Below, in pieces: positions 4,000-32,000 of a stretch of 64,000 nucleotides of DNA. The notes below the pieces were generated by a model, which saw nothing but the letters and a program-made list of their open reading frames with translations, made no database searches and was not told the DNA's origin. The stretch comes from Heptranchias perlo (taxonomy: Eukaryota). The position numbers and the translations under genes were made by a program. The stretch is from contig NC_090362.1 in NCBI RefSeq assembly GCF_035084215.1, positions 5,890,001 to 5,954,000 of the forward strand, read 5' to 3'. The number at the start of each line of letters is the position of its first letter. Within the stretch, counting starts at the first letter, position 1.

Positions 4000-4398
4000 A
4001 AGAAGAAAGACTTGCATTTGTGTAGCGCCTTTCACAACCTCAGAACATCACAAAGCACTTTACAGCCAATGAAATACTTTTGAAGTGTAGTCACTGTTGT
4101 AATGTAGGAAAAGCAACAGCCAATTTGCACACAGCAAGATCCCACAAACATCAATGTGATAATCATCAGATAATCTGCTTTCAGCTGTTGGCTGAGGGAT
4201 AAATATTGGTCAGGGCACCAGGGAGAGGTCCCCTGCTCTTCTTCGATTAGTGCCATGGGATCTTTTACATCTACCTGAGAGGGCAGACGGGGCCTCGCTT
4301 TGACGTCTCGTCCAAAAGACAGCACCTCAGGCGGTGCAGCTCCCCCTCACTACTGCACTGGGAGTGTCAGCCTAGATTATGTGCTCAAATCTCTGGAT
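4000..4398 (-). mobile_element. Deu-domain tRNA-SINE (SacSINE1/AmnSINE-like), 5'-truncated; copy 23379-23777
   Basis: Reverse complement of the body and tail of the full-length copy at 56356-56793. Confidence 0.8.
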
Positions 4399-6467
4399 TG
4401 CCGTGTGGAGCGAGCGAAACTCTGCTCCCAAATTCCCGATACGTGTGAGGTTCCACAGAGGGAGCGTGAATCCATAAAGTCATCTCTACACGCTCCCACA
4501 TTCAGCACAGATCCCTGTATTCTGCTCCAACAACACACCTTGATCCCAGCTTCTGAAAAGATCCCCCTACAACACCAATGTGATTTTTTGTTTCCCACAC
4601 CAGCCATCATTACAATCAGCCTCTCCCCCTCCCGTTACTCCACACCATCCCGACTCACACTGGGAATTCAGTGGGGTGCTGAGCTTGTGCACTGTGAGGC
4701 CGTGTGTGAGAACTGGGCTGGGCTGGGCCTGGCCAAACTCATTGCAAGTCGCTATGCTGCAGGCAGTGGAGAGATGAGACTGTCATCCAGACATTCTGGA
4801 CTGGTTTCAAGCCCAGGTACCAGAGGTGAGACGGTATCATGCTAAAACTGCCCTCACTGTAGCACAGACTGGCACTCAGAGAGGTCACAAGGTCAGGTGG
4901 TACAGGAAAAGCAAAGGCTCACACTGGGGCCCTGCTCTGTGTTTGGGGTCAATCCACCTTGTTGATGCTGAGTGAAAGAAATTGGCTCTGTGCCAAACCT
5001 GTGCTGTACCTGACCTGGGACTTCGGAACGCTGGCACTTGGGCCTAGAATTGGATCACACCCGAGTTGGGGTGAGATCCGGGTGCAGCGCACACCACACA
5101 CGCCTAATGATCACGGCCACAGCAAATCGGTCCGCTGGCCTCACTTCTTTATTACCAGAGAGCTGCGGGACCCAGTCACAGCCACAGAGATAGCTCACTG
5201 ATCGTCAGGGAGGGAGCAAGATTGGCCGACTGGGACCTAAGGTGATTGCGGGGGTAGGGGGTTGGTGAGGCAATGGGGAGGGGACGAGCGGTGACTGGTA
5301 GAGGCTCGCGATATTAATGTGGGGTCGGGAGGAGTGTTCATGCTTCCTCCTGATTCACATTCAGGTAAGGATTTTATTCTAAACTTACCGTTTTGCTGGC
5401 GGCCTCCAGCGGTCCCTACAAGGAGCCCTGGTTAGGCCGCATGGAGATCTGGTAATCCTGAATTCAGCAGGCCTGAAGCCTGCAGCATTGAGGGCAAACC
5501 ATTCTATGGTTTGGGTCCAAAAACAAGCTGTAGGCCTCTTATTGGAATATTCAGGGGGCCTAACCCCCATTTCAGGCAGCAGCCATGGACGCCTCTACAG
5601 CGACCGAACCAAAATGGCGTCAGATGTGTTTCTGACGCTATTCGGGAATGGAGGGTTTGGCCCCCTAAATTGGACCTGTTTTGCACCCATTATTCACCCG
5701 CAAAACGGGTGCAACCAGGTCTGATTTCCCCCCCGGGGGTCTGCAGTGGGAACGTGTTCAATCCCTGGTGCTAACCGTGATGAGCATAAAGTATATATTG
5801 TTTTAATCTTGTGCCACAAGAGTTTAATAAAAGTTAACCGTTCCCCTTTCCCCTTTACTCGATTACGCTCAGGGATCCACTGTTTGAGCATAAATAGGAT
5901 TTTCTTCCATTTTTAACGGGTAAGGTTTCTGATCCTCTTCCACCGGGTGGGACTCTGTCACCCTGTCCCCAGGGATCACTGACCCCGGGCAGCCTATCAG
6001 AGAATAAGTGTGTTCATTGGACGAAGCAACGGGCTCCTCCTTACTGTCCTCTTTGGGCTGAGATTGGCCGTCTGGTTTGAGTTCAATTGCTGACGAGGTT
6101 TCAATCTGATGTCCATGGTCCGTGTGGTCTCTGCCTAGATATTAAGAGAGGAGATCACGTTTGATGGGTTTCACTTGCAGTCGGGGAGAAATAATGAAAG
6201 GGGATTGACTCGTTACATGAGATTAAGGTCCAGGAGCTTTATAACAGGCACAGTATTGGCTGAGAGGATTATACTGAAAGATTGCAACTACTTACATTTC
6301 ACTCCCTGGATTTCAGTTTCGCCTCCATCACTAGGAAAACAGAAAATTAAACATGTGAGGAATGAGAAACATAAGATTCAATCGATATTAAACAGCTGTA
6401 AGTGGGGACTGGATTAGATTACTTACTCCCCAGGGTCTGGACTTGTGTCCAGCCCAGACAGAAACTC

Positions 6468-7672
6468 TCCCTCTCTTTTTCTGTCTCTCTCTCTCTGCCT
6501 GTCTGTCGTTATCTCTGTCTCTGTCTCTCTGTCTCAGTCTCTGATGCTCTCTCTTTCTGTCTGTCTGTCTCCCTCTCTGTCTCTCTCTGTCCATCTCCCT
6601 GTCTCTCTCTCTTTCTGTCTGCCTATCTCCCTCACTCTGCCTACCTCTGTCGCTCTCCCTCTCTCTCTCTGTCTCTGTTGATCTCTCTGTCTGTCTGTCT
6701 CCCACTAAGTCTCTCTCTCACTCAGTCCCTCTCTCTCACTCTCTCATTTTCTGTCTGTCTATCTCTGCCTCTCTGTCTCTCTCTCTCTGTTTGTCTCTGT
6801 CTCTCTCTATGTGTCTGTGTTTCTCTCTGTCTGTCTGTCTCCATCTGTCTGTCTCTCTGTCTGTCTCTTTCTGTCTGTCTCTTGCTCTGTCTCTCTCCCC
6901 GTCAGTCTCTTTCACTCTGTCTGTCCCTCTCTCTGACTCTCTCTCTCCGTCTCTCTCCCTCTCGCTATCTCTCTCTCTCTGTCTCTCTCTCTGTCTCTGT
7001 GAACAATCCTCTCTGCAATGAGTTGCCACAGTACCAATCCAGTTCCTTGCCTAAAACTGCCCATAATTCGGGACAATTTAGGACTGAATTGATCGTTTTA
7101 TTCAGACAAGCTAAAATATTGATATGAGAAAAGTTTTTTGAACAAATAAGTTCCTTCAATCACAAGGAAAGGAGATATTCTGATGTTGGGATAAAGGAGC
7201 ACTATCAGGGCAGAGGGCAGAGTGCTTTACATGGCCTCTGGCCATTCTGTACCTGGCTTGGGACTGTTTGGTCGTGAGATTAGATGCAAAAACTGGAAAT
7301 GCTTTGGACTGGGTGATGCAATAGATTAGACCGTCCTTTCATATCTTCTTCTCAAAGCAAGTCCAGACTACTGAGAATAAAGGTCCTCTTTCTATCTCTC
7401 GCTGTCTCGCTCTCTCTGACTCTATCTCTTTGTCTGTCTCTGTATCTGTTTCTGTGTCTGCCTCTTTGCGTCTCTCTCTTTCTCTTTGTCTGTCTCCTCT
7501 CTCTGTGTCTCTCTCCATCTCTCCCTCTCGCTCTGTCACTCCCTCTCACTCTGTCTCTCTGTCCAAGTCTCTCTTCCTGTCTGTCTCTCTCTTCCTGTCT
7601 GTCTCTCTCTCTTCCTGTCTGTCTCTCTCGCTTCCTGTCTGTCTCTCTCTTCCTGTCTGTCTCTCTCTCTCT
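6468..7672. repeat. Two CT/CTGT low-complexity microsatellite tracts (6468-7000, 7388-7672); copies 25847-26473 and 26860-27142
   Basis: Polypyrimidine (ct)n/(ctgt)n sequence. Confidence 0.95.
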
Positions 7673-7734
7673 TAAGGGTCCTTGATGAAATGGGTTTGGT
7701 CATCTTGATTCAGTTTGTAGCTCATGTGGGCCCA

Positions 7735-9266
7735 CAGTACAAAATTATCCCTCAATGTTTACAATCATTTTCCAAACTTCACTGGATACAGGCTTAGTGC
7801 CGGAGGATTGGAGGACTGCTAATGTTGTACCGTTGTTTAAAAAGGGAGCGAAGGATAGACTGAGTAATTACAGGCCAGTCAGCCTAACCTCGGTGGTGGG
7901 GCAATTATTGGAATCAATTCTGAGGGACAGGATAAACTGTCACTTAGAAAGGCACGGATTAATCAAGGACAGTCAGCACGGATTTGTTAAGTGGAGGTCG
8001 TGTCTGACTAACTTGATTGAATTTTTCGAGGAGGTGACAAGGAGGATCAATGAGGGTAGCGCAATTGATGTAGTCTACATGGATTTTAGCAAGGCTTTTG
8101 ACAAGGTCCCACACGGCAGATTGGTCAAAAATGTAAAGGCCCATGGGATCCAAGGGAATGTGGCAAATTGGATCCAAAATTGGCTCAGTGGCAGAAAGCA
8201 AAGGGTAATGGTCGACGGGTGTTTTTGCGACTGGTAGGCTGTTTCCAGTGGGGTGCCGCAGGGCTCGGTACTAGTTCCTTTGCTTTTTGTGCTATGCATT
8301 AACAATTTAGACTTAAACGTAGGGGCATGATTAAGACATTTGTGGATGACACAAGATAGGCCGTGTGGTTGATAGTGAGGAGGAAAGCTGTAGACTGCAG
8401 CAAGATATCAACGGACTGGTCAGATGGGCAGAAAAGTGGCAAATGGAGTTCAATCCAGAGAAGTGTGAGGTAATGCATTTGGAGAGAGCAAAAAAGGCAA
8501 AAGAATACACAATAAATGGGAGGATACTGAGAGGTGCAGAGGAAATGAAGGACCTTGGAGTGCATGTCCACAGATCCCTGAAGTAGCAGGACACGTAGAT
8601 AAGGTGATTAAGGCGGCATATGGAATGCTTTCCTTTATTAGCCAAGGCATAGAATATAAAAGCAGGGATGTTATGCTCGAACTGTATAAAACACTAGTTA
8701 GGCCACAGCTTGAGTACTGCGCAAAGTTCTGGTCACCACATTACAGGAAGGATGTAACTGCACTTGAGAGGGTGCAGAGGAGATTTACGAGGATGTTGCC
8801 AGAACTGGAGAATTTTAGCTATGATGACAGATTGGATAGGCTGGGGTTGTTTTCCTTGGAACAGAGGAGGCTGAGGGGTGATTTAATTGAGGTGTACAAA
8901 ATTATGAGGGGCCTCGATCGACAGGATAGGAAGGACCTATTTCCCTTAGTGGAGGGGTCAATAACCAGGGGGCATAGATTTAAAGTGATTGGTAGAAGGA
9001 TTAGAGCGGAAATTAGGAAATTTTTTTTCACCCAGGGGGTGGTGGGGGTCTGGAACTCAATGCCCGAAAGGGTGGTAGAGGCAGAAACCCTCAACTCATT
9101 TAAAAAATACCTGGATGTGCACCTGAAGAGCCGTGACCCGCAGGGCTACGGACCAAATGCGGGAAAGTGGGATTAGGCTGGGTGGCTCGTTTGTCAGCCG
9201 GCGTGGACACGATGGGCCGAATGGCCTCCTTCTGTGCCATAAATTTTCGATGATTCTATGATTCTA
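7735..9266 (+). mobile_element. CR1/HER1-type LINE, 5'-truncated, disrupted RT; copy 27205-28736
   Basis: NYRPVSLTS, QHGF, YMDFSKAFDKVPH, GVPQGSV, RPQLEYC; 3' tail attctatgattct. Copy A has an extra TAG at 8235. Confidence 0.93.
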
Positions 9267-9569
9267 ATTGGCAATTTCATTCAAACAGCCCATGAGGTGT
9301 GAGAAGTGGAGATGTCCTTGCTCCCTCCTGAGTTTGGAGTTGAGGAGCATTGTTAGGACAGTCCTCAGGGAGCTTTACACTATGTCCAATCTGTGCAGTC
9401 CCTGACCTGGAGTGCTCGAAATGATACTGGGTGGCCAAAATGGAAAAGTAACTCATTTACCAGCACGGACTCCCCTCACCTTCATTACATTAACAATCTT
9501 CGAACCCTCCCTCCCAAAATAAACATTGTCAGTGTTGAACATTGCTGGGGTAACAGCTGTCAGCTCTTC

Positions 9570-10008
9570 TTACCCTTTGACCATTGGCTCTTTGATCACA
9601 CAGTACACGTGCTCTGTGGACACAGAGTTTCGGCCAGTGCTCTCCGATCCTTCACCTGGCCTTGTCTGGCCAGTTGGTGTTTGAACTCTCGTCACCGCGT
9701 ACGCTACAAGCTCGCTGTCATCTCTCTGGTCCCTTATGGGCACCACAGCAGGCGGGAAACCTGGACAGAAGGATGGGAACACGAAGTGTGCTTTTAGTTT
9801 CAAGTTACAAAGGGACACACTCGGAAGATCTGGGCAGTAATTCTGGATACTTACATTCAGCTTCCTGCATCAGCTGCACATCGCCGCCCCTACAGTTATT
9901 GGAGAAATGCAACAATGAAATGTTTCATTAAATGAGCAAAACTATACAGAAAGTCTGCACGAAAACTGAGTGAATCACATCCCTACCTCGGTCCTGGTGC
10001 TGAGAGCC
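9570..10008 (-). CDS. Copy A cytoplasmic exons (10008-9987, 9889-9855, 9760-9570) ending ...ELVAYAVT...TEHVYCVIKEPMVKG*
   Basis: The 22-nt and 35-nt exons restore frame (phase 1>2>1). The terminal exon coincides with ORF 9570..9818 after acceptor ccttctgtccAG. Confidence 0.78.
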
Positions 10009-13000
10009 CTTCACAATTCATGGGATAAGATCGGAAAGATAAATTTAAACATCATTGTAATGAGTCTGCATTTAAATACAATTTTCTGGTTTTAAATTGA
10101 ACATTTTAAAGCTCTCGCTTACCTTTCACAGATTGTCTGTTCCTTCTGATGATGCAAATTACCCCAACTATGCAAATGAGCACAACCGCGCACACGACAT
10201 ACACAAATTTGTCAGTGGCACCAGTGTAAGGATCTGCAGAGGAGAAGCAACATTATGTTCAGTCTGTGCAATCCCGTGTTTTGTGGGACAGCTGATTACA
10301 CTGGTTACCTGGGCTGAAGAACAAAGGTTAGAATAGGTTTCAGGTTAGAATCTGGAATAGTACAATGGCAAAAGAAGAAAATCAAACCAATTTATAATGG
10401 GTACAAACTGTACAACTGATCTAGAATCTCTCAGCTTGAATTATTACTACTTAAATGATCACATTATATTTTAGATTGTATCACTTATTTTCAGTATTTG
10501 TAGGGGTTATGCTGCTGGTCACTGCAGATGTTTGATGATGTTCTCCAGCGTCATTCTCTCTTAGAATTCTAGATGTTGAGGTGGAGGTGTCTGAAGATTC
10601 TGCACTCGGCTCTGTCACAGTAAGGGAGACATTTGCTGCTATCTTCCAGACACGATTCCCAGAACTAGATCCAGCAATGTCTCCTTCTCCATTGTTTCTT
10701 AACTCTAACCAAGGTGATGCTAATGCTATCAAATGGAGATTGCTGGGCTCCCTCTTGGAGATGGTCATTGTCTGGCACTTGTGTGGTGCAAATGTTACTT
10801 GCCACTTATCAGCCCAAGTCTGGATGTTGTCCAGGTCTTGCAGCATGCGGGCATGAACTGCTTCATTATCTGTGGAATTTTGAATGGAGCTAAACACTGA
10901 AAACATCACCGAGCAGCCCCATTTCTGACCTTATGATGGAGGGAGGGTCATTGATGAAACAGCTGAAGAGAGTTAGGACTCGGACGCTGCCATGAGGAAC
11001 TCCTGCAGCGATGTCCCCCTGGATACTGGTGGTGCCGGGCCTTTTTCTTGAACAGTGCAGTCCGTGTGGTGAAGGTGCTCCCACAGTTCTGTTATGTCGG
11101 GAATTCCAGGAATTTGACCCAATGACAATGAAGGATAAGTGGCAATAGGAACAGTATGTGACTTGGAGGGGAGCTTAGAGATGATCATGTTCCCAGGACA
11201 TTGCTGCTCTTATCCTTCTTGATGGTCGAGGGAGGGAGTTGCTGTAGATGGTACATACTGAAGCCATAGTGTGCCAGTGGTGGATTGGACATTGAGCCTG
11301 GTGACAGAGAGGGATCCAGGTGGGAGAGCCCCACCCTGGGAGAGCTCAGTGTTAGTTATGGCATTTCTGCAGGATATTGAAATCCAATATTAATATTGCA
11401 GTGATTTATTTTGTGACACAAATGATATCACCTCACTATGTGCCTGTGAACAAAGAACAATTTCACGAGGTCGGTCTTTATTTTGTGAGATGGTGTAAAA
11501 CAGGTGATAACGAATCGTCAGCCCGTTTTACATCAATCCCCATTTTTATTTCCATTGACTTCAAATCTGTCCTGAAGCAGTGTATCAATGGAAGGCAGGG
11601 AATGGTGGGGTCCACAATAACACATCAGGGGGAATTCACTGACCCTGCCCCTCTCCCCCGACAGTGAGCTCTGCTTAAAGTAGATGCAATTGATTTGGGC
11701 CCATTCCCTGACCCCTGCCCCATGTTTGAGCATGGCTGCCCACTGGTGAATTTACCAGTGATGTCCTTTTATGTTACTCAATGGCCCCATGCATTGTTCA
11801 ACATTTCCAACAGCAAAATATAAACTTCTAATTTCAATGTAGTCACACTGTTTTCTGCTTTTAAAAACACTGTTTAGAGACAGGCTGGGGGCAGACAATT
11901 AGTGACGAACTTTCCCTTACACCATCGTGAATTTCCACCTCAGCGTCCTCATTAATAGGGCCACCTGCCCCTCTCCCCCTCCCCCTTCTCCCCACAGCAA
12001 CCTCTCTCACTCTCCCCATTCCCCCTCACTCCCCTTCCTCCCCCTCTCTCCTCCAGGTTACCTGGGACGAAGAACAAACTTTACCGGTTAGAATCTGGAA
12101 TAGCACAATAACGAAGGAAAGAAATGGAACCAACTTATAATGGGTACAAACTGGTTTCTCTCAGCTTGAATTATTTATATTAAATGAGTCACATATTTTA
12201 GATTGTATCACTTACTTTCAGTATTTGCAGGGGTTATGCTGCTGTTCACTGAGGATATTCCAGATGTTGAGGTGGAGGTGTCTGAAGATTCTGCACTCGG
12301 CCCTGTCACAGCAAGGGAGACGTTTGCTGCAATCTTCCAGACAGGTTTCCCTGAATCCTGAACATGTACAACACAGAGATACCTCCCTATGTCTACCCTG
12401 TGAGCTGAGTGTATAGTAAGGTTGTGAGACTGGCTTCTATCAGTAGGATTGTGTGAGTTTTGGTTGGAAATTCGTTGTTCCGATTTTCTATCCACACAGC
12501 AGTGTGTGTTAGAATGTGAATTATAATCCTCAATGTGAACAGAATGCAGACACTTGCTGATGTTTCCAGATGTGATCCAAAACAGAGTGAAGGGCAGGCT
12601 TTTTCTATTCTCAAACTGACAGGGTAAAGTCACACTCTCTCCTTCTGACACTGTCATCAACATAGAGTTTTCTTTGGTGGGAAATATTTCATCTGAATCT
12701 ATAAACAACATTGAAAAAAATATTTGTTAATATAATAATCTCCCCTAATAATCTCCAGTGTGGTACTTTGTCAAAAGATTTCCTAAAGTCCATGTACACC
12801 ACATCCACTACACTTCACCATGTCTGATAGCTCCTCAAAGCTTGGTCAAGCATGTTCCTCTTGAAATCCGTGCTGGCTACTCCCCAATACCTCCCCTGTT
12901 ACCTCCCCTGATACCTTCCCCGATACCTCCCTGATACCTCTCCTGATAGCTCCCCTGTTACCTCCCCTGTACCTCCCCTGATACCTTCCCTGTACCTCCC

Positions 13001-16000
13001 CTGATACCTTCCCCAATACCTCCCTGATACCTCTCCTGATAGCTCCCCTGTTACCTCCCTGATACCTCCCGAATGCCTTCCCCAATACCTCCCCAATACC
13101 TCAAATGACACCACCCCGTTACCTCCCCGATACTTCCCCTGATACCTCCCCGATAACCCCTGCTACCTCCCTGATATCTCCCCCAGTTACCTTCCCCTGA
13201 TACATCTCTTGATACCTCCCGATATCGCCCCGGGACACGTACCACTTTGGATTATCACAAAGAATAAGTTGTGGTTTTCACATCCATCTCCTGTCAGTGT
13301 GACCAAGGACAGACAATCCGATGATCCATTTCCTGTGGAATCCTGAGCCGTGCAGGTAAATACCATAGAGTTTGATGTCTTCACATCGAATGTCAGTGAC
13401 TGAGACTCCATTCGATCTTCATTTGTTTTATGTTTTTTACACTCTGGCTGATTTTGTTTTTTGCTCTTCTGAGGATTGTTGTTTCCACAAGATTCAATTT
13501 TCATCCCTTTTTTCTTACATTTTGTTTTGCCCATTTCTGTTCCGAGATCACTGGTACTCCACCAGGTTACTTTATTCCCAGCACCAGCGGGTACGTTGCA
13601 TTGCAGAGTGGTGAAATCCCCTGGTCCTCGAGAGAAGAGATAAGTGGATCCTACAGGGAAAGGGCAGAATCAGATAGAGATAAATAACATTCCATACAGG
13701 AAAGGTCATTAAACACTCAGTGTGAAACAAAGCCTCTCACAGTAAATGAAGGAATGGTATTTTTTAAAACTGCACAATGGCTTGTAATAGGCCAGTTTAT
13801 TGTTGTTCCTTTCACAAAATTCTTTGCCACAGTCTCTAAATTAGCAAATCCACTTGGTGTTACAAATTACTTTTGTGTCAAATTACATTTTCCAAATTGT
13901 TTCATTGACGCTTGTTGACAACGTCTTCATTATTTTTTGAGATCTACTAGATCACCCTGCAGGAAGCGGATGATTACAGACATCAGTTAATGTCAGGATT
14001 AGATCGGGCTGTGATGCCCCCCATGGTCCAGCAGCCTGCTGATTCTGACTGTCGAGACTTGTATATGAAGAATGGCCACTCGCACGAGGTGCTGGAGGGC
14101 GGCTGGCACCCGGGGAACAGTAATCCGGCACCTGGGCCTGGAATCGTGCTGATCAGGAAAGAGTTCAACTTATTGGTCAGTCTCCTGTAACGTTGCACAT
14201 GGAGACTCAAGACTGGTGCAATCTCTAGTTGGGGCGGGGTTAAAAGGAGGGTGATAATTGGACCAGGGTGCACCGTCATAATGCAGTCCTTGGCGTGTAA
14301 TTGGCAAATGAATTTCAATATAGATAAGTGTGAGGTGGTACATTTTGGTAGGAAGAATAAGGAGGGCCACAAACTCCTTGGATAGTAGGAGTCCAAATGT
14401 GGCAGAGGAGCAGAGGGATCTGAGGGTACAGATACACAAATCACTAAAAGTAGTGACACAGGTTAATAAGGTCATAAAAAAGCAAACCAAGCACTGGGAT
14501 TCATTTCTAGAGGGATAGAATTGAAAAGCAGAGAAGTTATGTTAAAATTGCATACAACCTTGGTTCGGCCACACCTGAAATACTGTGAACAGTTCTGGTC
14601 TCCATATTATAAAAATGATATAGAGGCACTGGAGAAAGTGCAAAAAAGATTTACTAGGATGATACCAGAACTGAGAGGTTATACCTAGCAGGAAAGATTG
14701 AACAGGCTGGGGCTCTTTTCTCTCGAAAAGAGAAGGCTGAGGGATGACCTGATTGAGGTCTATAAAATTATGAAAGGGTTTGATAGGGTAGACGTAGAGA
14801 AGATGTTTCCACTTGTGGGTGAGACCAGAGCTAGGGGCCATAAATATAAGATAGTCACTAAGAAATCCAACAGGCAATTCAGGAGAAGTTTCTTTACCCA
14901 GAAGTGGTTAGAATTTAGAACTTGCTACCACAAGGAGTAGTTGAGGTAACTAGGCATAAATGCATTTAAGGGGAAGCTAGATAAACACGTGAGGGAGAAA
15001 GGAATAGAAGGATATGTTGATGGGGTTAGATGAAGTAGGGAGGGAGGGGGCTCATGTGGCATATAAACACAGACATGGACCTGTTGGGCTGAATGGCCTG
15101 TATCTGTGCTGCACATTCTATATACAATATACCTTGATTTTATATTACTATTTTTAGTTAAATATCAAAACTTACAACAATCTGGGAAGCAGAGAAGTAG
15201 AGTCAGTTGGAGCACAGGAACTTCTCTGGAGAACAGACTGAGGAGCCGGGAAACACAAATCCGAGTGCTACAGTGCAACCACTGGTGGGAGGGGGTAATT
15301 GCAGTGTGACAAGTTTAAAAGGAACAAAAGAGGATGTCTAAAAGTGCTTTACAGCCAATGAACGACTTTTGAAGTGTAGTCACTGTTGTAACGTAGGAAA
15401 CAAGGCAGCCAATTTACTCCCAGCAAGATCCCACAAACAGCAATGTGATAATGACCAGATAACCCGTCAGTTATGCTGGTTGAGGGATAAATATTGGCCA
15501 GGTCACCAGGGAGAATTCCTCTGCTCTTCTTCGAAAAAGTGTCAGTGGATCTTTTACATCCACCTGAGAGGGTTGACGGAGCCTCACTTTCACGTCTCAT
15601 CTGAAAGACGGCACCTCAGACAGTGAAAGAGGCCATTCAGCACATCTTTCCTGTGCCAGCTCTTTAAAAGAACTATCCAATTAATCTCACTCCCCTGCTC
15701 TTTCCCCATAGCCCTGAAAATTATCCAAATCCCTTTTGAAAGACACAATCGAATCTGCTTCCACCGTTCTTTCAGGCAGTACAATCCAGATTATAATAAC
15801 TCGCTGCGTAAAGATTGCTCCTCGTGTCGCCTCTTGTTCTTTTGCCAATTATCTTAAATCTGTGTCCTCTGGTCACCGACCCTCCTGCCAGTGGAAACAG
15901 TTTCTCCTTATTTATTCCATCAAAACCATGCAAAATATTGAACATCTCTATTAAATCCCCCTGAACTTTCTCTGCTGTAAGTTGACCCACCCTCTCTACT

Positions 16001-18971
16001 ACACAAAGTCTGCATAGAGACCCCACCTGACACAAAGTCTGGGTAAAGATTCCATATTACACAGAGTCTGAATAAAGAACTCCCCCATTACAGTGAGTCT
16101 GGATAGAGAACCCCATTACACAAAGTCTGGATAAAGACCCCTCCCCCATTGCACAGAGTCTGGATAGAGATCCCCCATTACACAGAGTCTGGATAGAGAT
16201 CCCCCATGACACAGAGTCTGGATAGAGATCCCCCATTACACAGAGTCTGGATAGAGATCTCCCATTACACAGAGTCTGGATAGAGATCCCCCATGACACA
16301 GAGTCTGGATAGAGATCCCCCATTACACAGAGTCTGGATAGAGATCTCCCATTACACAGCCGGGGGAGAATCATACAAAGGATGGTTGTGGTTGTTGGAG
16401 GTATATAAGCTGAGTTCAAGGATATCACTGCCGGGCGTCTTCAGGGCAGGGTCCAAAGCCCAACTATCTTCAGCTGCTTCGTCAATGACTTTCCCTCCAT
16501 CATGAAGTAAGAAATAGGACTGTTTGCTGATGTTTTCAGTGTTCAGCTCCATTCTCAATTCCTCAGATAATGAAGCAGTCCGTGCCCGCATACAGCAAGA
16601 CCTGGACAACATCCAGGCTTGGGCTGAGAAGTGACAAGTAACATTCGCAACACATAAGTGTCAGGCAATGACCATCTCCAACAAGAGAGAGTCTAACCAC
16701 CTCCACTTGGCATTCAATAGCGATACCATCACTGAGTCCCCCACCATCAACAATTTGGGGGATCACCATTGACCTGAAACTCGATGGGACCAGCTACATA
16801 AATGCCGTGGCTATTACAGCAGAAGAGAAGCTGGTATTTTGCAACAAGTGGCTCACCTCCTCACTCACCAAAGCCTCTCCAGCATCTATAAGTCATAAGT
16901 CAGGAGTGAGATGAAATATGCTCTATTTGCCTGATTGGGAGCAGCTGCAATAACACTAAAGAAGCTCGACACCATCCAGGCCAAAGCTGTCTGCAGACCC
17001 ATGACCTCCGCCACCGAGATGGACAAGGGCAGCAGGTGCTTGGGAAACCATCACCTGCAAGTTTACCTTCAACTCACACAACGTCCCGACTTGGACATAT
17101 ATTGCTGTTCCTTCATTGTTGCTGGGTCAAAATCCTGGAATTCCCTACAGAACTGCATTGTGGGAGCACGTTCACCACATGGACTGCAGAAGGAGGCCCA
17201 CCAGCACCTTCTCGAGGGCAATTAGGGATGGGCAACAAATGCCGGAATTGCCAGTGACGTCCACATCCCAAAGAATGATAAAAATAAATATGAAGCAATC
17301 ATCTACTTAATGAAGGAAATTAATTTAAAGATGTGCCATTCAATACTGGTTCCTAAGCTTTGGTGTGATTGTATTAACTGATAATGGGTGCAAGGACATC
17401 AGTTAGTCCTGTAAACGGAAATATCTTTGTAAATATTGTCTTTTTAATTGGGGTTTCTGTAGAAGGAGGAAATTAGCTGGTGCTGAATGGTACAGAACCA
17501 AAGACAGACTCAAAATTACAGGGTATCACTTGGTGGAATAGCAATTTTTTGTAAATTATTGCTAAGATAATGAAGTGGAGATGCCGGTGATGGACTGGGG
17601 TTGACAATTGTAAACAATTTTACAACACCAAGTTATAGTCCAGCAATTTTATTTTAAATTCACAAGCTTTTGGAGGCTTCCTCCTTCGTCAGATAATGAA
17701 GTAAGAGAGTTATATTGAACTCGGTAGTTCAATGGAAAAAGATCTCATTAGTCAGGAAACCAGCTTATTACCTAAAGTTATCAATAAGAGATAATTTAAA
17801 TAGATTCTCCTTATATGGAGTTGTATTTTAACTTTTGGTATAATATTGTAACCATCGCTAGTGGTTGGATGAACTTTTAAGTGTTTGTTAAGCATTATTG
17901 CATGTACTGCACGCTTAATAAATCTATGAACACTTATGCTCAATATTTCAAGAATCTTATTGATTTTGAGGATTAGATAGAACATCTCATCATAAATAAA
18001 AACCATCCTCTAACAGAGGATGAGACCGGAATGCTACCAGGGATGAGGGAATTCAGTTATGTGGAAAGACTGGAGAAGCTGGGATTGTTTTCCTTAGAAC
18101 AGAGAAGGTTAAGGGGAGATTTAACAGAAGTGGTCAAAATTATGAAAGGTATTGATAGCGTAAATAAAGAGAAACTGTTTCCATTGGCAGGAAGGTCGGT
18201 AACCAAAGGACACAGATTTCAGATAATTGGCAAAAGAACCAGGGGAGATGAGGAAATAAGAATTTAAACAGCGAATTTACGATCTGGAATGCACTGCCTG
18301 AAAGGGTGGTGGAAACAGATTCAATAGCAACTTTCAAAAGGGATGAATACTAGAAAGACAAAATTTGCAGCGCTATGAGGAAAAAGCAGGCAAGTGGGAC
18401 TAAGTGGACAGCTCTTTCAAAGAGCCGGCACAGACACGATGGGCTGAATGGCCTCCTTCTGTGTTGTATCATTCTATGAGAAGGAGGCATTTCAGCCCAT
18501 TGTATCAGTGCTGGCTCTTTACCAGAACAATCTCATTGCCCCGCTCTCCCCACAGTCCTGTATCTTTCTCTGCTTCAAATGTTTATCCCATTCTCACTTA
18601 AAAGATGCAATGATCTCGGCCTCAACCAGTCCCTGTGGAAAACATTCCAAACTCCAACAACCCTCTGTGTAAAGACATTTCTCCAAACCTCTCTCCTCAC
18701 TCTCTTAGTGACAAGTTTAAACTGACGACTCACGATTAAACCTTTAAACGGCACAGCAAGGACTGTGATACGAGCACATTAAACACCCGCAGGAGAACAG
18801 CACCGATGGGAATCGATATCTTTCAATCTTTATATTTCTCCATTGAGATACAGATCGACACTGAAATTTCCAGACAAGAAATATGTTGAAGATTAACTGA
18901 AAGTATTAATCCTTACCTGTAGCATATTGGAACAGAAGGAACAGACCCACAAACAAAGCACTGAGCATCAT
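9570..18971 (-). CDS. IgSF type I membrane receptor gene, copy A (8 exons: 18971-18917, 13650-13243, 12698-12216, 12094-12062 [in-frame TAA], 10233-10123, 10008-9987, 9889-9855, 9760-9570)
   Basis: All exons have AG acceptors and GT donors with compatible phases (1,1,1,1,1,2,1). Translation gives leader, two Ig-like domains, S/T stalk, TM and a Tyr-motif tail. The same structure recurs in unit B. Confidence 0.85.
10123..10233 (-). CDS. Copy A transmembrane exon DPYTGATDKFVYVVCAVVLICIVGVICIIRRNRQSVK
   Basis: Acceptor cttctcctctgcAG, donor GTAAGC. About 20 hydrophobic residues followed by a basic stop-transfer RRNR, with no charged residue in the TM. Confidence 0.88.
10309..10655 (-). pseudogene. 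Dead relic of the 3' part of an Ig2/stalk exon plus a frameshifted micro-exon copy, inside intron 4 (unit A)
   Basis: VWKIAANVSLTVTEPSAESSDTSTSTS... matches the exon 3 C-terminus. The 5' end is cut off by a CR1 fragment, the donor is mutated GTAAGT>ATAAGT, and the micro-exon copy is 43 nt. Confidence 0.8.
12062..12094 (-). CDS. Copy A 33-nt micro-exon containing in-frame TAA (12083-12081)
   Basis: ctattccAG|AT TCT AAC CGG TAA AGT TTG TTC TTC GTC CCA G|GTAAC. The homologous exon in copy B is open, with AAA at that codon. Confidence 0.65.
12216..12698 (-). CDS. Copy A exon 3, V-type Ig domain 2 plus Ser/Thr-rich stalk (161 codons)
   Basis: VSEGESVTLPC...LFW...HNLTIHSAHRVDIGRYLC is a canonical V-set pattern. 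Acceptor ttgtttatAG, donor GTAAGT, phase 1-1. Confidence 0.92.
12880..13230. repeat. ~12-bp minisatellite (gatacctcccct)n in intron 2; shorter copy 32720-32950
   Basis: Tandem degenerate 11-12-mers. Confidence 0.9.
13243..13650 (-). CDS. Copy A exon 2, atypical Ig-like domain 1 (136 codons)
   Basis: Acceptor ccctttccctgtAG, donor GTACGT, phase 1-1. Ig motifs TTLQC...VTWW...SLTFDVKTSNSMVFTC. Confidence 0.8.
14291..15120 (+). mobile_element. CR1 LINE 3' fragment, present only in unit A intron 1
   Basis: LGLFSLEKRRLRDDLIEVYKIMKG; the empty site is at ~34010 in unit B. Confidence 0.88.
15340..15975 (-). mobile_element. Deu-SINE fragment followed by a CR1 3' end
   Basis: SINE body 15340-15625; GDLIEMFNILHGFDGINKEKLFPLAG at 15625-15975. 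Confidence 0.8.
16000..16358. repeat. 28-30-bp minisatellite (cattacacagagtctggatagagatccc)n, ~12 units
   Basis: Tandem units; same family as 46205-49100. Confidence 0.92.
17577..17690 (-). mobile_element. Solo Penelope pseudo-LTR fragment with degenerate hammerhead motif and 12-bp TSD AGATAATGAAGT
   Basis: Similar to the reverse complement of 52779-52896; direct repeats at 17565-17576 and 17691-17702. Confidence 0.8.
18020..18480 (+). mobile_element. CR1 LINE 3' end
   Basis: YVERLEKLGLFSLEQRRLRGDL; tail gggctgaatggcctccttctgtg...attctatg. Confidence 0.88.
18917..18971 (-). CDS. Copy A exon 1, signal peptide MMLSALFVGLFLLFQYAT(G)
   Basis: ATG at 18971, hydrophobic core, phase-1 donor G|GTAAGG typical of IgSF leader exons. 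Confidence 0.85.
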
Positions 18972-25000: not shown

Positions 25001-25954
25001 AGATGTGTTTCTGACGCTATTCGGGAATGGAGGGTTTGGCCCCCTAAATTGGACCTGTTTTGCACCCATTATTCACCCGCAAAACGGGTGCAACCAGGTC
25101 TGATTTCCCCCCCGGGGGTCTGCAGTGGGAACGTGTTCAATCCCTGGTGCTAACCGTGATGAGCATAAAGTATATATTGTTTTAATCTTGTGCCACAAGA
25201 GTTTAATAAAAGTTATCCGTTCCCCTTTCCCCTTTACTCGATTACGCTCAGGGATCCACTGTTTGAGCATAAATAGGATTTTCTTCCATTTTTAACGGGT
25301 AAGGTTTCTGATCCTCTTCCACCGGGTGGGACTCTGTCACCCTGTCCCCAGGGATCACTGACCCCGGGCAGCCTATCAGAGAATAAGTGTGTTCATTGGA
25401 CGAAGCAACGGGCTCCTCCTTACTGTCCTCTTTGGGCTGAGATTGGCCGTCTGGTTTGAGTTCAATTGCTGACGAGGTTTCAATCTGATGTCCATGGTCC
25501 GTGTGGTCTCTGCCTAGATATTAAGAGAGGAGATCACGTTTGATGGGTTTCACTTGCAGTCGGGGAGAAATAATGAAAGGGGATTGACTCGTTACATGAG
25601 ATTAAGGTCCAGGAGCTTTATAACAGGCACAGTATTGGCTGAGAGGATTATACTGAAAGATTGCAACTACTTACATTTCACTCCCTGGATTTCAGTTTCG
25701 CCTCCATCACTAGGAAAACAGAAAATTAAACATGTGAGGAATGAGAAACATAAGATTCAATCGATATTAAACAGCTGTAAGTGGGGACTGGATTAGATTA
25801 CTTACTCCCCAGGGTCTGGACTTGTGTCCAGCCCAGACAGAAACTCTCCCTCTCTTTTTCTGTCTCTCTCTCTCTGCCTGTCTGTCGTTATCTCTGTCTC
25901 TGTCTCTCTGTCTCAGTCTCTGATGCTCTCTTTCTGTCTGTCTGTCTCCCTCTC

Positions 25955-26103
25955 NNNNNNNNNNNNNNNNNNNNNNNNNNNNNNNNNNNNNNNNNNNNNN
26001 NNNNNNNNNNNNNNNNNNNNNNNNNNNNNNNNNNNNNNNNNNNNNNNNNNNNNNNNNNNNNNNNNNNNNNNNNNNNNNNNNNNNNNNNNNNNNNNNNNNN
26101 NNN
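25955..26103. other. Assembly gap (149 N) inside the CT microsatellite of unit B
   Basis: Run of N. Confidence 1.
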
Positions 26104-29039: not shown

Positions 29040-32000
29040 TTACCCTTTGACCATTGGCTCTTTGATCACACAGTACACGTGCTCTGTGGACACAGAGTTT
29101 CGGCCAGTGCTCTCCGATCCTTCACCTGGCCTTGTCTGGCCAGTTGGTGTTTGAACTCTCGTCACCGCGTACGCTACAAGCTCGCTGTCATCTCTCTGGT
29201 CCCGTATGGGCACCACAGCAGGCGGGAAACCTGGACAGAAGGATGGGAACACGAAGTGTGCTTTTAGTTTCAAGTTACAAAGGGACACACTCGGAAGATC
29301 TGGGCAGTAATTCTGGATACTTACATTCAGCTTCCTGCATCAGCTGCACATCGCCGCCCCTACAGTTATTGGAGAAATGAAACAATGAAATGTTTCATTA
29401 AATGAGCAAAACTATACAGAAAGTCTGCACGAAAATTGAGTGAATCACATCCCTACCTCGGTCCTGGTGCTGAGAGCCCTTCACAATTCATGGGATAAGA
29501 TCGGAAAGATAAATTTAAACATCATTGTAATGAGTCTGTATTTAAATACAATTTTCTGGTTTTAAATTGAACATTTTAAAGCTCTCGCTTACCTTTCGCA
29601 GATTGTCTGTTCCTTCTGATGATGCAAATTACCCCAACTATGCAAATAAGCACAACCGCGCACACGACATACACAAATTTGTCAGTGGCACCAGTGTAAG
29701 GATCTGCAGAGGAGAAGCAACATTATGTTCAGTCTGTGCAATCCCGTGTTTTGTGGGACAGCTGATTACACTGGTTACCTGGGCTGAAGAACAAAGGTTA
29801 GAATAGGTTTCAGGTTAGAATCTGGAATAGTACAATGGCAAAAGAAGAAAATCAAACCAATTTATAATGGGTACAAACTGTACAACTGATCTAGAATCTC
29901 TCAGCTTGAATTATTACTACTTAAATGATCACATTATATTTTAGATTGTATCACTTATTTTCAGTATTTGTAGGGGTTATGCTGCTGGTCACTGCAGATG
30001 TTTGATGATGTTCTCCAGCGTCATTCTCTCTTAGAATTCCAGATGTTGAGGTGGAGGTGTCTGAAGATTCTGCACTCGGCTCTTGTCACAGTAAGGGAGA
30101 CATTTGCTGCTATCTTCCAGACACGATTCCCAGAACTAGATCCAGCAATGTCTCCTTCCCCATTGGGCCGGAAACATACTGATCAAGAAAGTTCTCCTGA
30201 ACACACTTCAGAAATTCCTCCCCCTCTTTGCCCTTTACACTATTACTATCCCAGTCTATATTAGGATAGTTGAAGTCCCCCATTATCACTATTCTATAGT
30301 TCTTGCACCTCTCTGTAATTTCCCTGCAAATTTGCATATTGGTGGCCTTTAGAATATATCCATTAGTGTCATGGCGCCTCCATTGTTTCTTAACTCTAAC
30401 CAAGGTGATGCTAATGCTATCAAATGGAGATTGCTGGGCTCCCTCTTGGAGATGGTCATTGTCTGGCACTTGTGCAGTGCAAATGTTACTTGCCACTTAT
30501 CAGCCCAAGTCTGGATGTTGTCCAGGTCTTGCAGCATGCGGGCATGAACTGCTTCATTATCTGTGGAATTTTGAATGGAGCTAAACACTGAAAACATCAC
30601 CGAGCAGCCCCATTTCTGACCTTATGATGGAGGGAGGGTCATTGATGAAACAGCTGAAGAGAGTTAGGACTCGGACGCTGCCATGAGGAACTCCTGCAGC
30701 GATGTCCCCCTGGATACTGGTGGTGCTGGGCCTTTTTCTTGAACCGTGCAGTCCGTGTGGTGAAGGTGCTCCCACAGTACTGTTAGGTCGGGAATTCCAA
30801 GAATTTGATCCAATGACAATGAAGGATAAGTGGCAATAGGAACAGTATGTGGCTTGGAGGGGAGCTTAGAGATGATCATGTTACCAGGACATTGCTGCTC
30901 TTATCCTTCTTGGTGGTAGAGGGAGGGAGTTGCTGTAGATGGTACATACTGAAGCCATTGTGTGCCAGTGGTCCATTGGACATTGAGCCTGGTAACAGGG
31001 AGGGATCCAGGTGGGAGAGCCCAACCTTGGGAGAGCTCAGTGTTAGTTATGGCATTTCTGCAGGATTTGAAATCCAATATTAATATTGCAGTGATTTATT
31101 TTGTGACATAAATGATATCACCTCACTATGTGCCTGTGAACAAAAAACAATTTCACGAGGTCGGTCTTTATTTTGTGAGATGGTGTAAAACAGGTGATAA
31201 CGAATCGTCAGCCCGTTTTACATCAATCCCCATTTTTATTTCCATTGACTTCAAATCTGCCCTGAAGCAGTGTATCAATGGAAGGCAGGGAATGGTGGGG
31301 TCCACAATAACACATCAGGGGGAATTCACTGACCCTGCCCCTCTCCCCCGGCAGTGAGCTCTGCTTAGAGGAGATGCAATTGTATTGGGCCCATTCCCTG
31401 ACCCCTGCTCCATGTTTGAGCATGGCTGCCCACTGGTGAATTTACCAGTGAAGTCCTTTTATGTTACTCAATAGCCCCATGCATTGTTCAACATTTCCAA
31501 CATCAAAATATAAACTTCTAATTTCAATGTAGTTACACTGTTTTCTGCTTTTAAAAACACTGTTTAGAGACAGGCTGGGGGCAGACAATTAGTGACGAAC
31601 TTTCCCTTACACTATCCTGGATTTCCACCTCAGCCTCCTCATAAATAGGGCCACCTGCCGCTCTCCCCCTCCCCCCTCTTCCCTCTCCCCCCAGCGACCT
31701 CTCTCACTCTCCCCCCTTCTTCCCCCTCTCCCCTCCAGGTTACCTGGAATGAAGAACAATATTTTCCGGTTAGAATCTGGAATAGTACAATAACGAAGGA
31801 AAGAAATGGAACATACTTATAATGGGTACAAACTGGATTCTCTCAGCTTGAATTATTTATATCAAATGATCACATTATATTTTAGATTGTATCACTTACT
31901 TTCAGTATTTGCAGGGGTTATGCTGCTGTTCACTGAGGATATTCCAGATGTTGAGGTGGAGGTGTCTGAAGATTCTGCACTCGGCCCTGTCACAGCAAGG

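What the first reader, a model, noticed from the sequence alone, without database searches (positions are those of the whole stretch)
13243..13650. Ig1 divergence is almost entirely non-synonymous and neutralises a basic loop
Manual comparison with 32963-33370 gives 18 nucleotide differences, 17 in amino-acid-changing codons (15 residues) and one synonymous (ACA/ACG). Eleven residue changes cluster in ~35 aa: A KKKGMKIESCGNNNPQKSKKQNQPECKKHKTNEDR vs B EKQRMKIKSNGNNNPQDSNNQNQPECRKHETNEDQ. The patch is strongly basic in A and about neutral in B. The adjacent intron (13651-13980 vs 33371-33700) is much better conserved than this loop. Inference: diversifying selection on a ligand- or pathogen-contact surface.
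Basis: partly seen in the sequence, partly recalled or inferred. Interest (0 to 1): 0.8.

Follow-up and report, generated by a model that had tools for sequence, protein, structure and literature searches.

The report
Shark receptor paralog with recharged loop
Two neighbouring copies of a shark-only immune-type receptor gene differ mostly by amino-acid-changing mutations packed into one lysine-rich loop, which looks like adaptive change in one copy but cannot be proven from two sequences.

Summary
The two minus-strand, 408-nt, phase 1-1 exons differ at 18 sites: 17 non-synonymous, 1 synonymous, 15 residues changed. Thirteen of the 18 lie within 104 nt.

The window is Heptranchias perlo. The exons belong to two intact tandem genes, A (XP_067829442) and B (XP_067829443), of an uncharacterised two-Ig receptor family that my searches found only in sharks.

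The differences are not consensus errors. RNA contigs carry both loop versions, and B is spliced and transcribed.

A neighbouring four-Ig gene carries two more modules, both with the A-type loop. B is therefore the odd one of four: 19 private residue changes against 1 in its sister module.

B's loop goes from net charge +7 to 0, loses a cysteine and all three basic clusters, and B gains N-glycan sequons.

Support for omega > 1 is only nominal:
- Likelihood ratio test: omega about 6, p = 0.016-0.033.
- Nei-Gojobori with Fisher test: p = 0.08-0.14.
- Loop replacement rate (12.5%) exceeds every neutral proxy (0.6-6%).

A nearby Ig2 patch with 30% synonymous divergence shows that mosaic history occurs in this locus. 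The Ig1 loop lacks that signature.

Site models and structural mapping could not be done. No DNA of the other paralogs was available, and AlphaFold failed on Ig1. Verdict: positive selection is plausible but not proven.

The parts
13243..13650 (-). Copy A: exon for the membrane-distal, atypical Ig-like domain ('Ig1'). 408 nt, phase 1-1.
   Evidence: Open frame and splice sites. Matches residues 19-154 of XP_067829442 (P0002) at 100%. Exon limits confirmed by the RNA contig joint 12698|13243 and contig ends at 13652.
13412..13519 (-). Copy A: coding for the Cys-anchored Lys-rich insert (residues 44-79). Net charge +7, 3 Cys, three basic clusters.
   Evidence: 13 of the 18 A/B differences lie at 13413-13516.
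32963..33370 (-). Copy B: the same exon, 19,720 nt downstream on the + strand.
   Evidence: 100% match to residues 19-154 of XP_067829443 (P0033). B-type letters read in RNA contigs of 3 of 3 RNA-like runs.
33132..33239 (-). Copy B: insert coding region. Net charge 0, 2 Cys, no basic cluster.
13651..14199 (-). 3' part of intron 1 of copy A, used as the local neutral reference (0.9% different from B).
   Evidence: 5 of 547 aligned columns differ, 2 gap columns.
12699..13242 (-). Intron between Ig1 and Ig2 of copy A. Holds a 12-nt tandem array (12880-13224) whose length differs between A and B.
   Evidence: GT..AG joint in RNA contigs of X6 and X7. TRF result. 272 gap columns against B.
12216..12698 (-). 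Copy A: Ig2 (V-set) exon. Its 5' patch 12604-12682 is a mosaic tract with 30% synonymous divergence from B.
   Evidence: Fold match to V-set domains at Z 12.9.
31900..32382 (-). Copy B: Ig2 (V-set) exon.
18917..18971 (-). Copy A: coding part of the leader exon (signal peptide ending ..QYATG).
   Evidence: This A-specific leader was not seen among the RNA loose ends printed.
49912..49966 (-). Copy B: coding part of the leader exon (..QHATG). B's intron 1 is about 16.5 kb, against 5.3 kb in A.
   Evidence: Loose ends behind 13652 in X5, X6 and X7 read this leader type.
5872..10243 (-). Copy A: transmembrane and cytoplasmic exons. In-frame tblastn limits, not splice-exact: 10121-10243, 9573-9758, 6291-6329, 5872-6132. 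B equivalents: 29591-29713, 29043-29228, 25670-25708, 25251-25511.
   Evidence: In these four stretches, 1 non-synonymous and 2 synonymous differences between A and B.

Best explanation
The exon encodes the membrane-distal, atypical Ig-like domain of two intact tandem paralogs, A and B. They belong to a two-Ig, single-pass receptor family that my searches found only in sharks. The genome is that of the sevengill shark Heptranchias perlo.

The domain carries a 36-residue, cysteine-anchored, lysine-rich insert. Three of the four copies of this domain in the cluster keep an identical, strongly basic insert. These are A and both modules of the neighbouring four-Ig gene.

Copy B alone has replaced 11 of the insert's 36 residues. 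It drops from +7 to 0 net charge and loses one cysteine and all three basic clusters. Elsewhere in its ectodomain it gains three private N-glycosylation sequons.

Most likely this is an adaptive change of B's binding surface after duplication. It could be a loss or re-targeting of binding to a polyanionic ligand, or escape from something that exploits the basic loop. The signalling tail stayed the same.

Shown here: the differences, their clustering, B being the odd copy, B's transcription, and the excess of replacements over neutral proxies.

Inferred: that selection rather than drift fixed the changes, that the insert is an exposed loop, and what it binds.
For: - Counts: 17 non-synonymous against 1 synonymous difference, and 13 against 0 in the loop.
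- Maximum-likelihood omega is 5.5-6.7, p = 0.016-0.033 for the exon. For the loop 2dlnL = 6.5, p = 0.010.
- In neutral simulations, P(at most 1 synonymous of 18) is 0.061, 0.030 and 0.024 for kappa 1, 2 and 3.1. Local non-coding kappa is about 2.7.
- Loop pN is 12.5%. The neutral proxies are 0.63% (3' blocks, 41/6552 and 26/4059), 0.9% (intron), 1.2% (Ig1 pS), 1.1% (Ig2 outside its patch) and 2.9% (pooled pS).
- Poisson P(13 or more) runs from 3e-11 at a neutral divergence of 0.9% to 0.015 at 6.2%.
- The four-module table has 9 sites supporting ((A,C1),(C2,B)) and none in conflict. Private residue changes are A 1, C1 3, C2 1 and B 19. The Tajima relative-rate chi-square is 16.2, p = 5.7e-5.
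- The Ig2 patch shows what an old or imported tract looks like here: pS 0.30, pN 0.17. With that pS, zero synonymous changes in the Ig1 loop has P = 0.001.
- Going from A to B there are 4 sequon gains and 0 losses among 33 non-synonymous differences, P = 0.006-0.007. Three of the gains are private to B among its 19 private changes, P about 0.01. This test was chosen after seeing the data.
- B is intact at 533 aa. Its transcripts are spliced and present in 3 of 3 RNA-like runs.
Against: - The Nei-Gojobori Fisher test is not significant (p = 0.079 one-sided, 0.14 two-sided).
- Whole-exon pN does not beat pooled pS (17/320 against 10/340, p = 0.09) or the non-coding 10700-12207 stretch (p = 0.16).
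- The region was chosen after the pattern was seen. A correction for about 7 exons or 13 windows erodes the nominal p values.
- The insert is the fastest part of the domain in other sharks too. Loop versus framework divergence is 22% vs 9% in Pristiophorus paralogs and 15% vs 4% in Mustelus. Low constraint therefore contributes.
- Any replacement of Lys lowers charge, so the direction of the change is not evidence of selection.
- Polarisation with Heterodontus gives 6 loop sites derived in B, 2 where B equals the outgroup, and 3 undecided. The relative-rate test on these is p = 0.16 (hand count).
- The locus demonstrably has mosaic tracts. The three A-type loops may therefore be identical through gene conversion rather than slow evolution.
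- There is no structural model, no population data, and no DNA of C1 or C2.
Confidence: 0.5

Rival explanations
1. Relaxed constraint and drift. The insert is a low-complexity, probably flexible, weakly constrained segment. After duplication B's ectodomain became redundant and accumulated replacements by chance. The lack of synonymous changes reflects the few synonymous sites in Lys, Asn and Gln codons.
For: - Only 19.2 synonymous sites in the loop, so P(0 of 13) = 0.03-0.085.
- The Ig2 exon as a whole has omega 0.98.
- The loop is the most variable part of the domain in several other sharks, and its length varies from 30 to 36 residues.
- The Fisher test on Nei-Gojobori counts is not significant.
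Against: - Drift cannot exceed the neutral rate. Loop pN of 12.5% is 2 to 20 times every neutral proxy measured.
- The identical A-rich tract in three other copies shows 0 residue changes. RNA contigs of A type are base-identical to A over 164 nt.
- B keeps a full 533-aa frame and is transcribed.
- Sequon gains exceed expectation.
Confidence: 0.25
2. Mosaic history by gene conversion. Either the B loop is an old tract, or one imported from an unseen divergent paralog. Or the basic A-type loop arose once and was spread to A, C1 and C2 by conversion while B escaped. The clustering would then reflect tract boundaries rather than a burst of change on B.
For: - The duplication is a mosaic. Divergence is 0.63% over the 3' 10.6 kb, 3.5% over non-coding 10700-14291, and 0.9% again upstream of Ig1.
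- The Ig2 5' patch has pS 0.30 against 0.011 in the rest of that exon, so conversion-like tracts exist 700 nt away.
- At 2 loop sites B matches Heterodontus.
- An RNA contig in X7 carries a fifth combination of Ig2 variants, so unassembled or allelic donors may exist.
Against: - An old or imported tract should carry synonymous differences. There are none in 19.2 sites: P = 0.001 at the Ig2 patch's pS, and about 0.08 if pS equals the loop's own pN (the second figure is hand arithmetic).
- There is no indel, although the loop's length varies among species.
- No other H. perlo protein of this family was found beyond the three genes. A search with B's Ig1 alone found nothing. Both protein searches have length and word limits.
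- Even under this model, the replacements without synonymous change still need selection somewhere in the tract's history.
Confidence: 0.2
3. Artefact. The differences are consensus errors in an A-rich tract, or A and B are two haplotypes of one gene wrongly assembled in tandem.
For: - An N run (25955-26103) lies inside the B unit.
- The A-specific base at 13588 is not seen in any of the 4 runs laid.
- The DNA run's contigs show no B-type letters in the exons.
- All runs come from one sample, probably the assembled animal.
Against: - Both loop versions occur as separate contigs in 2 RNA-like runs. The B version occurs in a third, joined to B-type Ig2 across the intron.
- The DNA run does show B-type letters in the intron, at 12883 and 12921, at depth 47.8 of 179.9. 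Contigs drop minority variants.
- A and B have different leader exons, first introns of 5.3 and 16.5 kb, and a private insertion at 14292-15121.
- All differences are substitutions, not homopolymer indels.
Confidence: 0.03

Closest known systems
Fast-evolving multigene or paired IgSF immune receptors (CEACAM paired receptors, CD300A/CD300C, and KIR, LILR, PILR, SIRP by recall)
   Same: Tandem paralogs whose ectodomains are nearly identical modules joined to different membrane and tail parts. A and B have a long Tyr-bearing tail. The four-Ig neighbour has a charged transmembrane residue and a short tail. Replacements concentrate in one part of the membrane-distal domain, with conversion-like mosaic tracts. 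CEACAM (PMC5112662) and CD300A/C (PMC12447643) were seen only as search listings with the start of the abstract. The other families are recalled.
   Different: - No canonical ITIM or ITSM by pattern search. Only YCVI, YSLI and NPIY are present.
- The neighbour's membrane residue is acidic, not the usual basic one.
- Ig1 fails the Pfam cut-offs and could not be folded.
- All named hits are sharks.
- Ligand and cell type are unknown.
Modular domain immune-type receptors (MDIR) of the clearnose skate
   Same: A cartilaginous-fish multigene family of activating and inhibitory IgSF receptors with variable numbers of Ig domains. This comes from passages of PMC3031540 read. The two-Ig and four-Ig forms built from the same module here resemble that modularity.
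   Different: Membership could not be tested because no MDIR sequence was available from a tool. MDIR V domains are said to resemble CD300, TREM and pIgR. Here Ig2 matches V-set domains generically. Nectin, CD226, VSIG4 and B7-2 score Z 12.6-12.9, and pIgR D2 is merely tied at Z 12.2. Ig1 matches nothing.
Cardin-Weintraub heparin-binding consensus (XBBXBX / XBBBXXBX); the motif is recalled, not taken from a tool
   Same: The A-type insert matches both patterns, and one pattern reversed (CKKHKT, CKKKGMKI, QKSKKQ). B matches none.
   Different: A pattern match is not binding. Among the other 20 shark Ig1 sequences, 5 match the forward XBBXBX pattern and none matches XBBBXXBX. The motif is therefore not a family feature.

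Membership tests
Immunoglobulin-superfamily domain (for 'Ig1') | Passes a curated Ig-domain profile | tested here: not met
   Pfam 'ig' scores 17.4 bits for A and 14.3 for B, against a cut-off of 21.8. Ig_2 scores 15.7 against 27. No solved-structure sequence match covers residues 20-154.
Immunoglobulin-superfamily domain (for 'Ig1') | B-strand Cys and F-strand Cys, C-strand Trp, and one phase 1-1 exon per domain | tested here: met
   Cys17 and Cys98 (..FTC..) are invariant or nearly so in 19 sequences. Trp29/30 follows Cys17 by 12-13 residues in H. perlo. The other sharks have Leu-Cys there. The exon is 408 nt with phase 1 at both ends.
Immunoglobulin-superfamily domain (for 'Ig1') | Beta-sandwich fold | tested here: inconclusive
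   AlphaFold2 on a 19-row alignment gave mean pLDDT 29.8. In the full-length model, residues 20-154 have pLDDT 22-38 by 10-residue block. The position of the insert in the fold is therefore inferred from sequence only.
V-set Ig domain (for Ig2) | Profile above cut-off and V-type fold | tested here: met
   Pfam V-set scores 27.9 (A) and 30.2 (B) against a cut-off of 26. Model residues 164-288 have pLDDT 60-85. They align to nectin-1, CD226 and VSIG4 V domains at Z 12.8-12.9, rmsd 2.4-2.8, 106-111 residues.
Paired inhibitory/activating immune receptors | Inhibitory member with ITIM or ITSM in the tail | tested here: not met
   Pattern search for [SIVL]xYxx[IVL] and TxYxx[VI] found none in the tails of P0002 and P0033. 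Only YCVI, YSLI and NPIY are present.
Paired inhibitory/activating immune receptors | Activating member with a short tail and a charged (normally basic) transmembrane residue | tested here: inconclusive
   The four-Ig neighbour (P0001) has a short tail and an Asp, not Lys or Arg, in its membrane segment. Adaptor pairing cannot be tested here.
Genes under positive (diversifying) selection | dN/dS significantly above 1 | tested here: inconclusive
   Pairwise maximum-likelihood omega is 5.5-6.7, p = 0.016-0.033. Simulation gives p = 0.024-0.061. Nei-Gojobori with Fisher gives p = 0.079-0.14. The region was chosen after the pattern was seen. Site and branch-site models were not possible, because there is no DNA of the other paralogs.
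MDIR / CD300-like receptors | Sequence relationship of the V domain to MDIR, CD300, pIgR or TREM | not testable with these tools
   No MDIR reference sequence was obtainable. Profile and fold searches show no preference for CD300 or pIgR over other V-set proteins.
Heparin/polyanion-binding basic loops | Binding of sulfated glycans | not testable with these tools
   Only the recalled consensus patterns were matched: 3 in A, C1 and C2, and 0 in B.

The most novel reading that the evidence does not exclude
The insert is a charge switch within an unnamed receptor family so far found only in sharks. The basic A-type loop is kept identical on two-Ig long-tailed and four-Ig short-tailed receptors, and binds a polyanionic self or microbial ligand such as sulfated glycans. 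Copy B was driven by selection to lose that binding and to add glycans. It would be a re-targeted or escape receptor that keeps the same signalling tail. If so, this would be an early-vertebrate example of the decoy/escape dynamics known from mammalian paired receptors, played out on a domain type with no solved or predictable structure.
Probability: 0.15. Interest if true: 0.6.

Novelty: new member of a known kind. Interest (0 to 1): 0.38.

Why it matters
Innate immune-type receptor families of cartilaginous fish are poorly described. My four literature searches found no paper on this family. Its proteins are labelled 'uncharacterized' or mis-named 'serine-rich adhesin' in the databases.

The locus offers a compact natural experiment:
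- Four near-identical ectodomain modules sit in one cluster.
- Only one module has a rebuilt loop: charge +7 to 0, one cysteine lost, glycan sites gained.
- Both forms are transcribed.

If selection is confirmed, the 11 changed residues point directly to the ligand-contact site of an otherwise unmodellable domain. They also give an easy binding test of A against B ectodomains.

If selection is not confirmed, this is an ordinary example of fast drift in a low-complexity loop of a young paralog.

Tried and rejected
- **DNA of the neighbouring paralogs.** No multi-sequence codon, site or branch-site model, GARD or GENECONV analysis was possible. I used the annotated proteins of the four modules instead.
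- **Structure mapping.** Two AlphaFold2 jobs left Ig1 at pLDDT below 40 (Ig1 with a 19-row alignment; full-length protein with 24 rows). No electrostatics or site mapping was done. Only Ig2 could be fold-searched, and it is a generic V-set.
- **Short or fragmentary relatives of B's Ig1.** 8 candidates shared short words with the query and none scored.
- **Family naming.** The solved-structure sequence search found nothing for Ig1. ESM Atlas gave only generic V-set clusters (PD-1, CTLA-4, CD200R, TIGIT) at 0.89-0.90, a range the tool itself calls weak.
- **Literature.** Searches gave MDIR passages only. Searches gave no paper on this family. One search was badly worded and returned mostly irrelevant hits.
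- **Earlier scan notes.** A search by words found nothing. A genome-wide search returned unrelated receptors.
- **Polarising the loop changes with outgroups.** The loop alignment to Pristiophorus and more distant sharks is too uncertain. Only Heterodontus was usable, and the result was not significant (6 against 2, p = 0.16).
- **'Consensus error in the A-rich tract'.** Rejected.
- **Relaxed constraint alone.** Not rejected, but disfavoured because the rate exceeds the neutral proxies.
- **Expression of copy A itself.** This could not be shown. Its two private markers, C at 13588 and the QYATG leader, were not seen in the contigs. The A-type loop contigs may come from the four-Ig gene.
- **Supplementary files** of papers were not requested.
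Full report
**What is there**

Window 13243-13650 and 32963-33370 are the same exon on the minus strand. Each is preceded by an AG and followed by a GT. Each is 408 nt long with phase 1 at both ends. The frame is open from 13648 / 33368.

A self-comparison shows that the two exons sit in a tandem duplication of about 19.4-19.7 kb. Local block identities from that comparison are:
- 98.9% for 1-6577 against 19397-25954
- 99.2% for 6633-10694 against 26104-30165
- 95.2% for 10687-12740 against 30378-32424
- 95.4% for 13004-14291 against 32723-34009

Only two copies of the exon exist in the window.

**The observation**

- 18 of 408 bases differ (11 transitions, 7 transversions), with no indel.
- 15 residues change and there is 1 synonymous change (ACA/ACG, codon 119).
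- 11 of the 15 residue changes fall in residues 45-79.
- 13 of the 18 base differences fall within 13413-13516. A permutation test gives p = 0.0008 for that clustering.
- Loop net charge is +7 in A and 0 in B. Whole-domain charge is +3 against -4.
- The adjacent intron 13651-13980 differs at 4 of 329 aligned columns, and 13651-14199 at 5 of 547.

**Whose gene it is**

An exhaustive profile-free search with the A exon found 10 proteins at E up to 0.001. The best is a 683-aa protein that contains the domain twice. The second is a 533-aa protein that is 100% identical to A.

Names and cluster members identify the species as Heptranchias perlo:
- A = XP_067829442, 533 aa
- B = XP_067829443, 533 aa and intact
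- the neighbour = XP_067829354 to XP_067829357, with the architecture Ig1-Ig2-Ig1-Ig2, an Asp in the membrane segment and a short tail

I call the neighbour's two modules C1 and C2. An earlier scan note placed that gene just left of the window.

All 23 hits of the full-length search come from sharks: Pristiophorus, Carcharodon, Scyliorhinus, Mustelus, Heterodontus, Hemiscyllium, Cetorhinus and Chiloscyllium. Most are called 'uncharacterized'.

tblastn mapped the exons of both genes in the window. A's leader is at about 18.9 kb and B's at about 49.9 kb. B's first intron is therefore about 16.5 kb and A's is 5.3 kb.

Ig2 is a V-set domain by Pfam and by fold. Ig1 falls below the Pfam cut-offs, has no solved relative, and was not folded by AlphaFold2. 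Calling residues 44-79 a 'loop' therefore rests on sequence logic only. They form an insert between the conserved Cys17 and Cys98, anchored by conserved cysteines.

**Are the differences real?**

Eight runs from one sample hold the stretch. I laid one DNA run and three runs that the tool guessed to be RNA. The three behave as RNA. Depth falls only on the exons, and X6 and X7 carry a GT..AG joint from 12698 to 13243.

In X5 and X6 the segment 13383-13546 exists as two contigs. One is identical to A (depths 41 and 7.8). The other carries all 13 B letters (depths 66.7 and 9.6). In X7 a single contig carries B-type Ig1 spliced to B-type Ig2.

The A-rich-tract error idea is therefore refuted, and B is transcribed.

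There are four caveats.
- All runs come from one sample, probably the assembled animal.
- The A-specific C at 13588 reads T in 4 of 4 runs. The leader seen in loose ends is the QHATG type. Expression of A itself is therefore unproven, and one of the 18 differences is unconfirmed.
- Two of the 18 sites (13269, 13639) were not among the rows printed.
- The DNA run's contigs show B-type letters only in the intron (12883 and 12921, depth 47.8 of 179.9), not in the exons. The tool warns that contigs drop minority variants.

**B is the odd copy**

Aligning the four modules shows that the loops of A, C1 and C2 are identical. Nine sites support ((A,C1),(C2,B)) and none conflicts. Private residue changes are A 1, C1 3, C2 1 and B 19. 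B's 19 split into 13 in Ig1 and 6 at the start of Ig2.

The relative-rate test of B against its sister C2 gives chi-square 16.2, p = 5.7e-5. This holds only if gene conversion has not reset C2.

Across sharks the insert varies in length (30-36 residues) and in charge (-3 to +7). The H. perlo A type is the most basic of all, and B's neutral loop is typical of the family.

With Heterodontus as outgroup, B is derived at 6 loop sites, B equals the outgroup at 2, and 3 are undecided (hand count; p = 0.16). Outside the loop, Leu4 and Trp115 are ancestral. B's Phe4 and the Leu115 shared by A and C1 are therefore derived.

Other sharks have two more cysteines, at positions 30 and 73. All H. perlo copies replaced both. 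A-type Ig1 has 7 Cys and B has 6.

**Selection tests**

- Nei-Gojobori: S 85.2, N 319.8, Sd 1, Nd 17, dN/dS 4.66. Fisher p = 0.079 one-sided and 0.14 two-sided.
- My Goldman-Yang pairwise likelihood fit gives omega 5.5-6.7, with p = 0.016-0.033 under three codon-frequency settings. The loop alone gives p = 0.010. The rest of the exon is uninformative. The Ig2 exon gives omega 0.98.
- Simulated neutral mutations give P(at most 1 synonymous of 18) = 0.061, 0.030 and 0.024 for kappa 1, 2 and 3.1. Local non-coding kappa is about 2.7.
- Rate comparisons of the loop's 13/104 against four neutral proxies give p from 1e-7 to 0.012. The whole exon is not significantly above pooled synonymous sites (p = 0.09) or nearby non-coding DNA (p = 0.16).

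The neutral background is heterogeneous:
- 0.63-0.64% in the 3' 10.6 kb
- 0.9% upstream of Ig1
- pS 0.012 in Ig1
- pS 0.011 in most of Ig2
- 3.5% on average in non-coding 10700-14291
- pS 0.30 in a 27-codon patch at the start of Ig2

That patch looks like an old or imported tract. It shows that mosaic history is real in this locus.

The Ig1 loop differs in kind from that patch, because it has no synonymous change. P = 0.001 if it had the patch's pS. P is about 0.08 if its pS equalled its own pN (hand arithmetic).

**Other signs of directed change in B**

Going from A to B there are 4 N-glycan sequon gains (NHT, NVT, NKS, NQS) and no loss among 33 non-synonymous differences. The expected gain per mutation is 0.022-0.024, which gives P = 0.006-0.007. 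Three of the gains are private to B. I noticed this after the fact, so it carries less weight.

The A-type insert matches the recalled heparin-binding consensus patterns three times, and B never does.

**Reading**

An adaptive remodelling of B's insert is the best single explanation. I put it at about 0.5. Drift in a weakly constrained loop gets about 0.25, a conversion mosaic about 0.2, and an artefact about 0.03.

What the insert binds is unknown. No canonical ITIM or ITSM is present, so even the signalling sign of A and B is open.

**Comparison with known systems**

The locus behaves like the multigene or paired IgSF receptor families, such as CEACAM and CD300A/C (listings only). It also recalls the skate MDIRs (passages of PMC3031540). 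Membership in any named family could not be shown.

This is a new member of a known kind of phenomenon, in an unnamed shark family. The scan had first-reader notes on this same window and its left neighbour.

Noticed in passing
window 12604-12682 vs 32288-32366 (start of the Ig2 exon): 16 differences in 79 nt. Codons 14-40 have pS 0.30 and pN 0.17, against pS 0.011 in the rest of the exon. This is a sharply bounded old or imported tract, most simply explained by gene conversion. The neighbour's module C2 is intermediate at the protein level.
   Followed up: partly
window 12215 -> 13649 (joint in run X7): An RNA contig joins the end of an Ig2 exon back to the start of an Ig1 exon. This is the d2-d3 junction of the annotated four-Ig protein. 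The Ig1-Ig2-Ig1-Ig2 mRNA is therefore real and not an annotation artefact.
   Followed up: partly
window 12257-12634 (run X7, contig record 24): This contig carries B/C2-type letters at five Ig2 sites. It has a letter seen in neither A nor B at 12484, and the A-type letter at 12503. This is a fifth combination, so it may be another allele or an unassembled copy.
   Followed up: no
window 13588: The only A-private residue difference in Ig1 (Ala21, C on the + strand) reads T in the DNA contig and in all three RNA-like runs. It may be a minority copy variant dropped by the contig builder, a heterozygous site, or a consensus error.
   Followed up: partly
Ig1 residues 30 and 73 (window about 13559-13561 and 13430-13432): Most other sharks' Ig1 sequences have Cys at both positions (..TLC.. 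and ..CxxCK..). All four H. perlo copies have Trp and His instead. This suggests a disulfide lost as a pair. It leaves 7 Cys in A-type Ig1 and 6 in B.
   Followed up: no
window 12880-13224 and 32571-32950: A 12-nt tandem array (unit ATACCTCCCCTG, about 29 copies) fills the Ig1-Ig2 intron. Its length differs between A and B, giving 272 gap columns.
   Followed up: no
window 46207-49102, and a short relative at 15989-16359: A 30-nt tandem array of about 98 copies at 94% match lies inside B's 16.5-kb first intron. A roughly 370-nt piece of the same repeat lies in A's first intron.
   Followed up: no
window 1-10694 vs 19397-30165: The transmembrane and cytoplasmic halves of A and B differ by only 0.63-0.64% in substitutions, against 3.5% in the ectodomain-coding zone. 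The tails are either younger or homogenised. The four mapped TM and tail stretches (203 codons) differ at one residue.
   Followed up: partly
window 7755-9176 (+): Open frames with reverse-transcriptase-like sequence lie in an intron of copy A, with a counterpart in B. The retroelement identification is from recall. Another insertion private to A lies at 14292-15121.
   Followed up: no
window 25955-26103: A run of 149 N lies inside the B unit.
   Followed up: no
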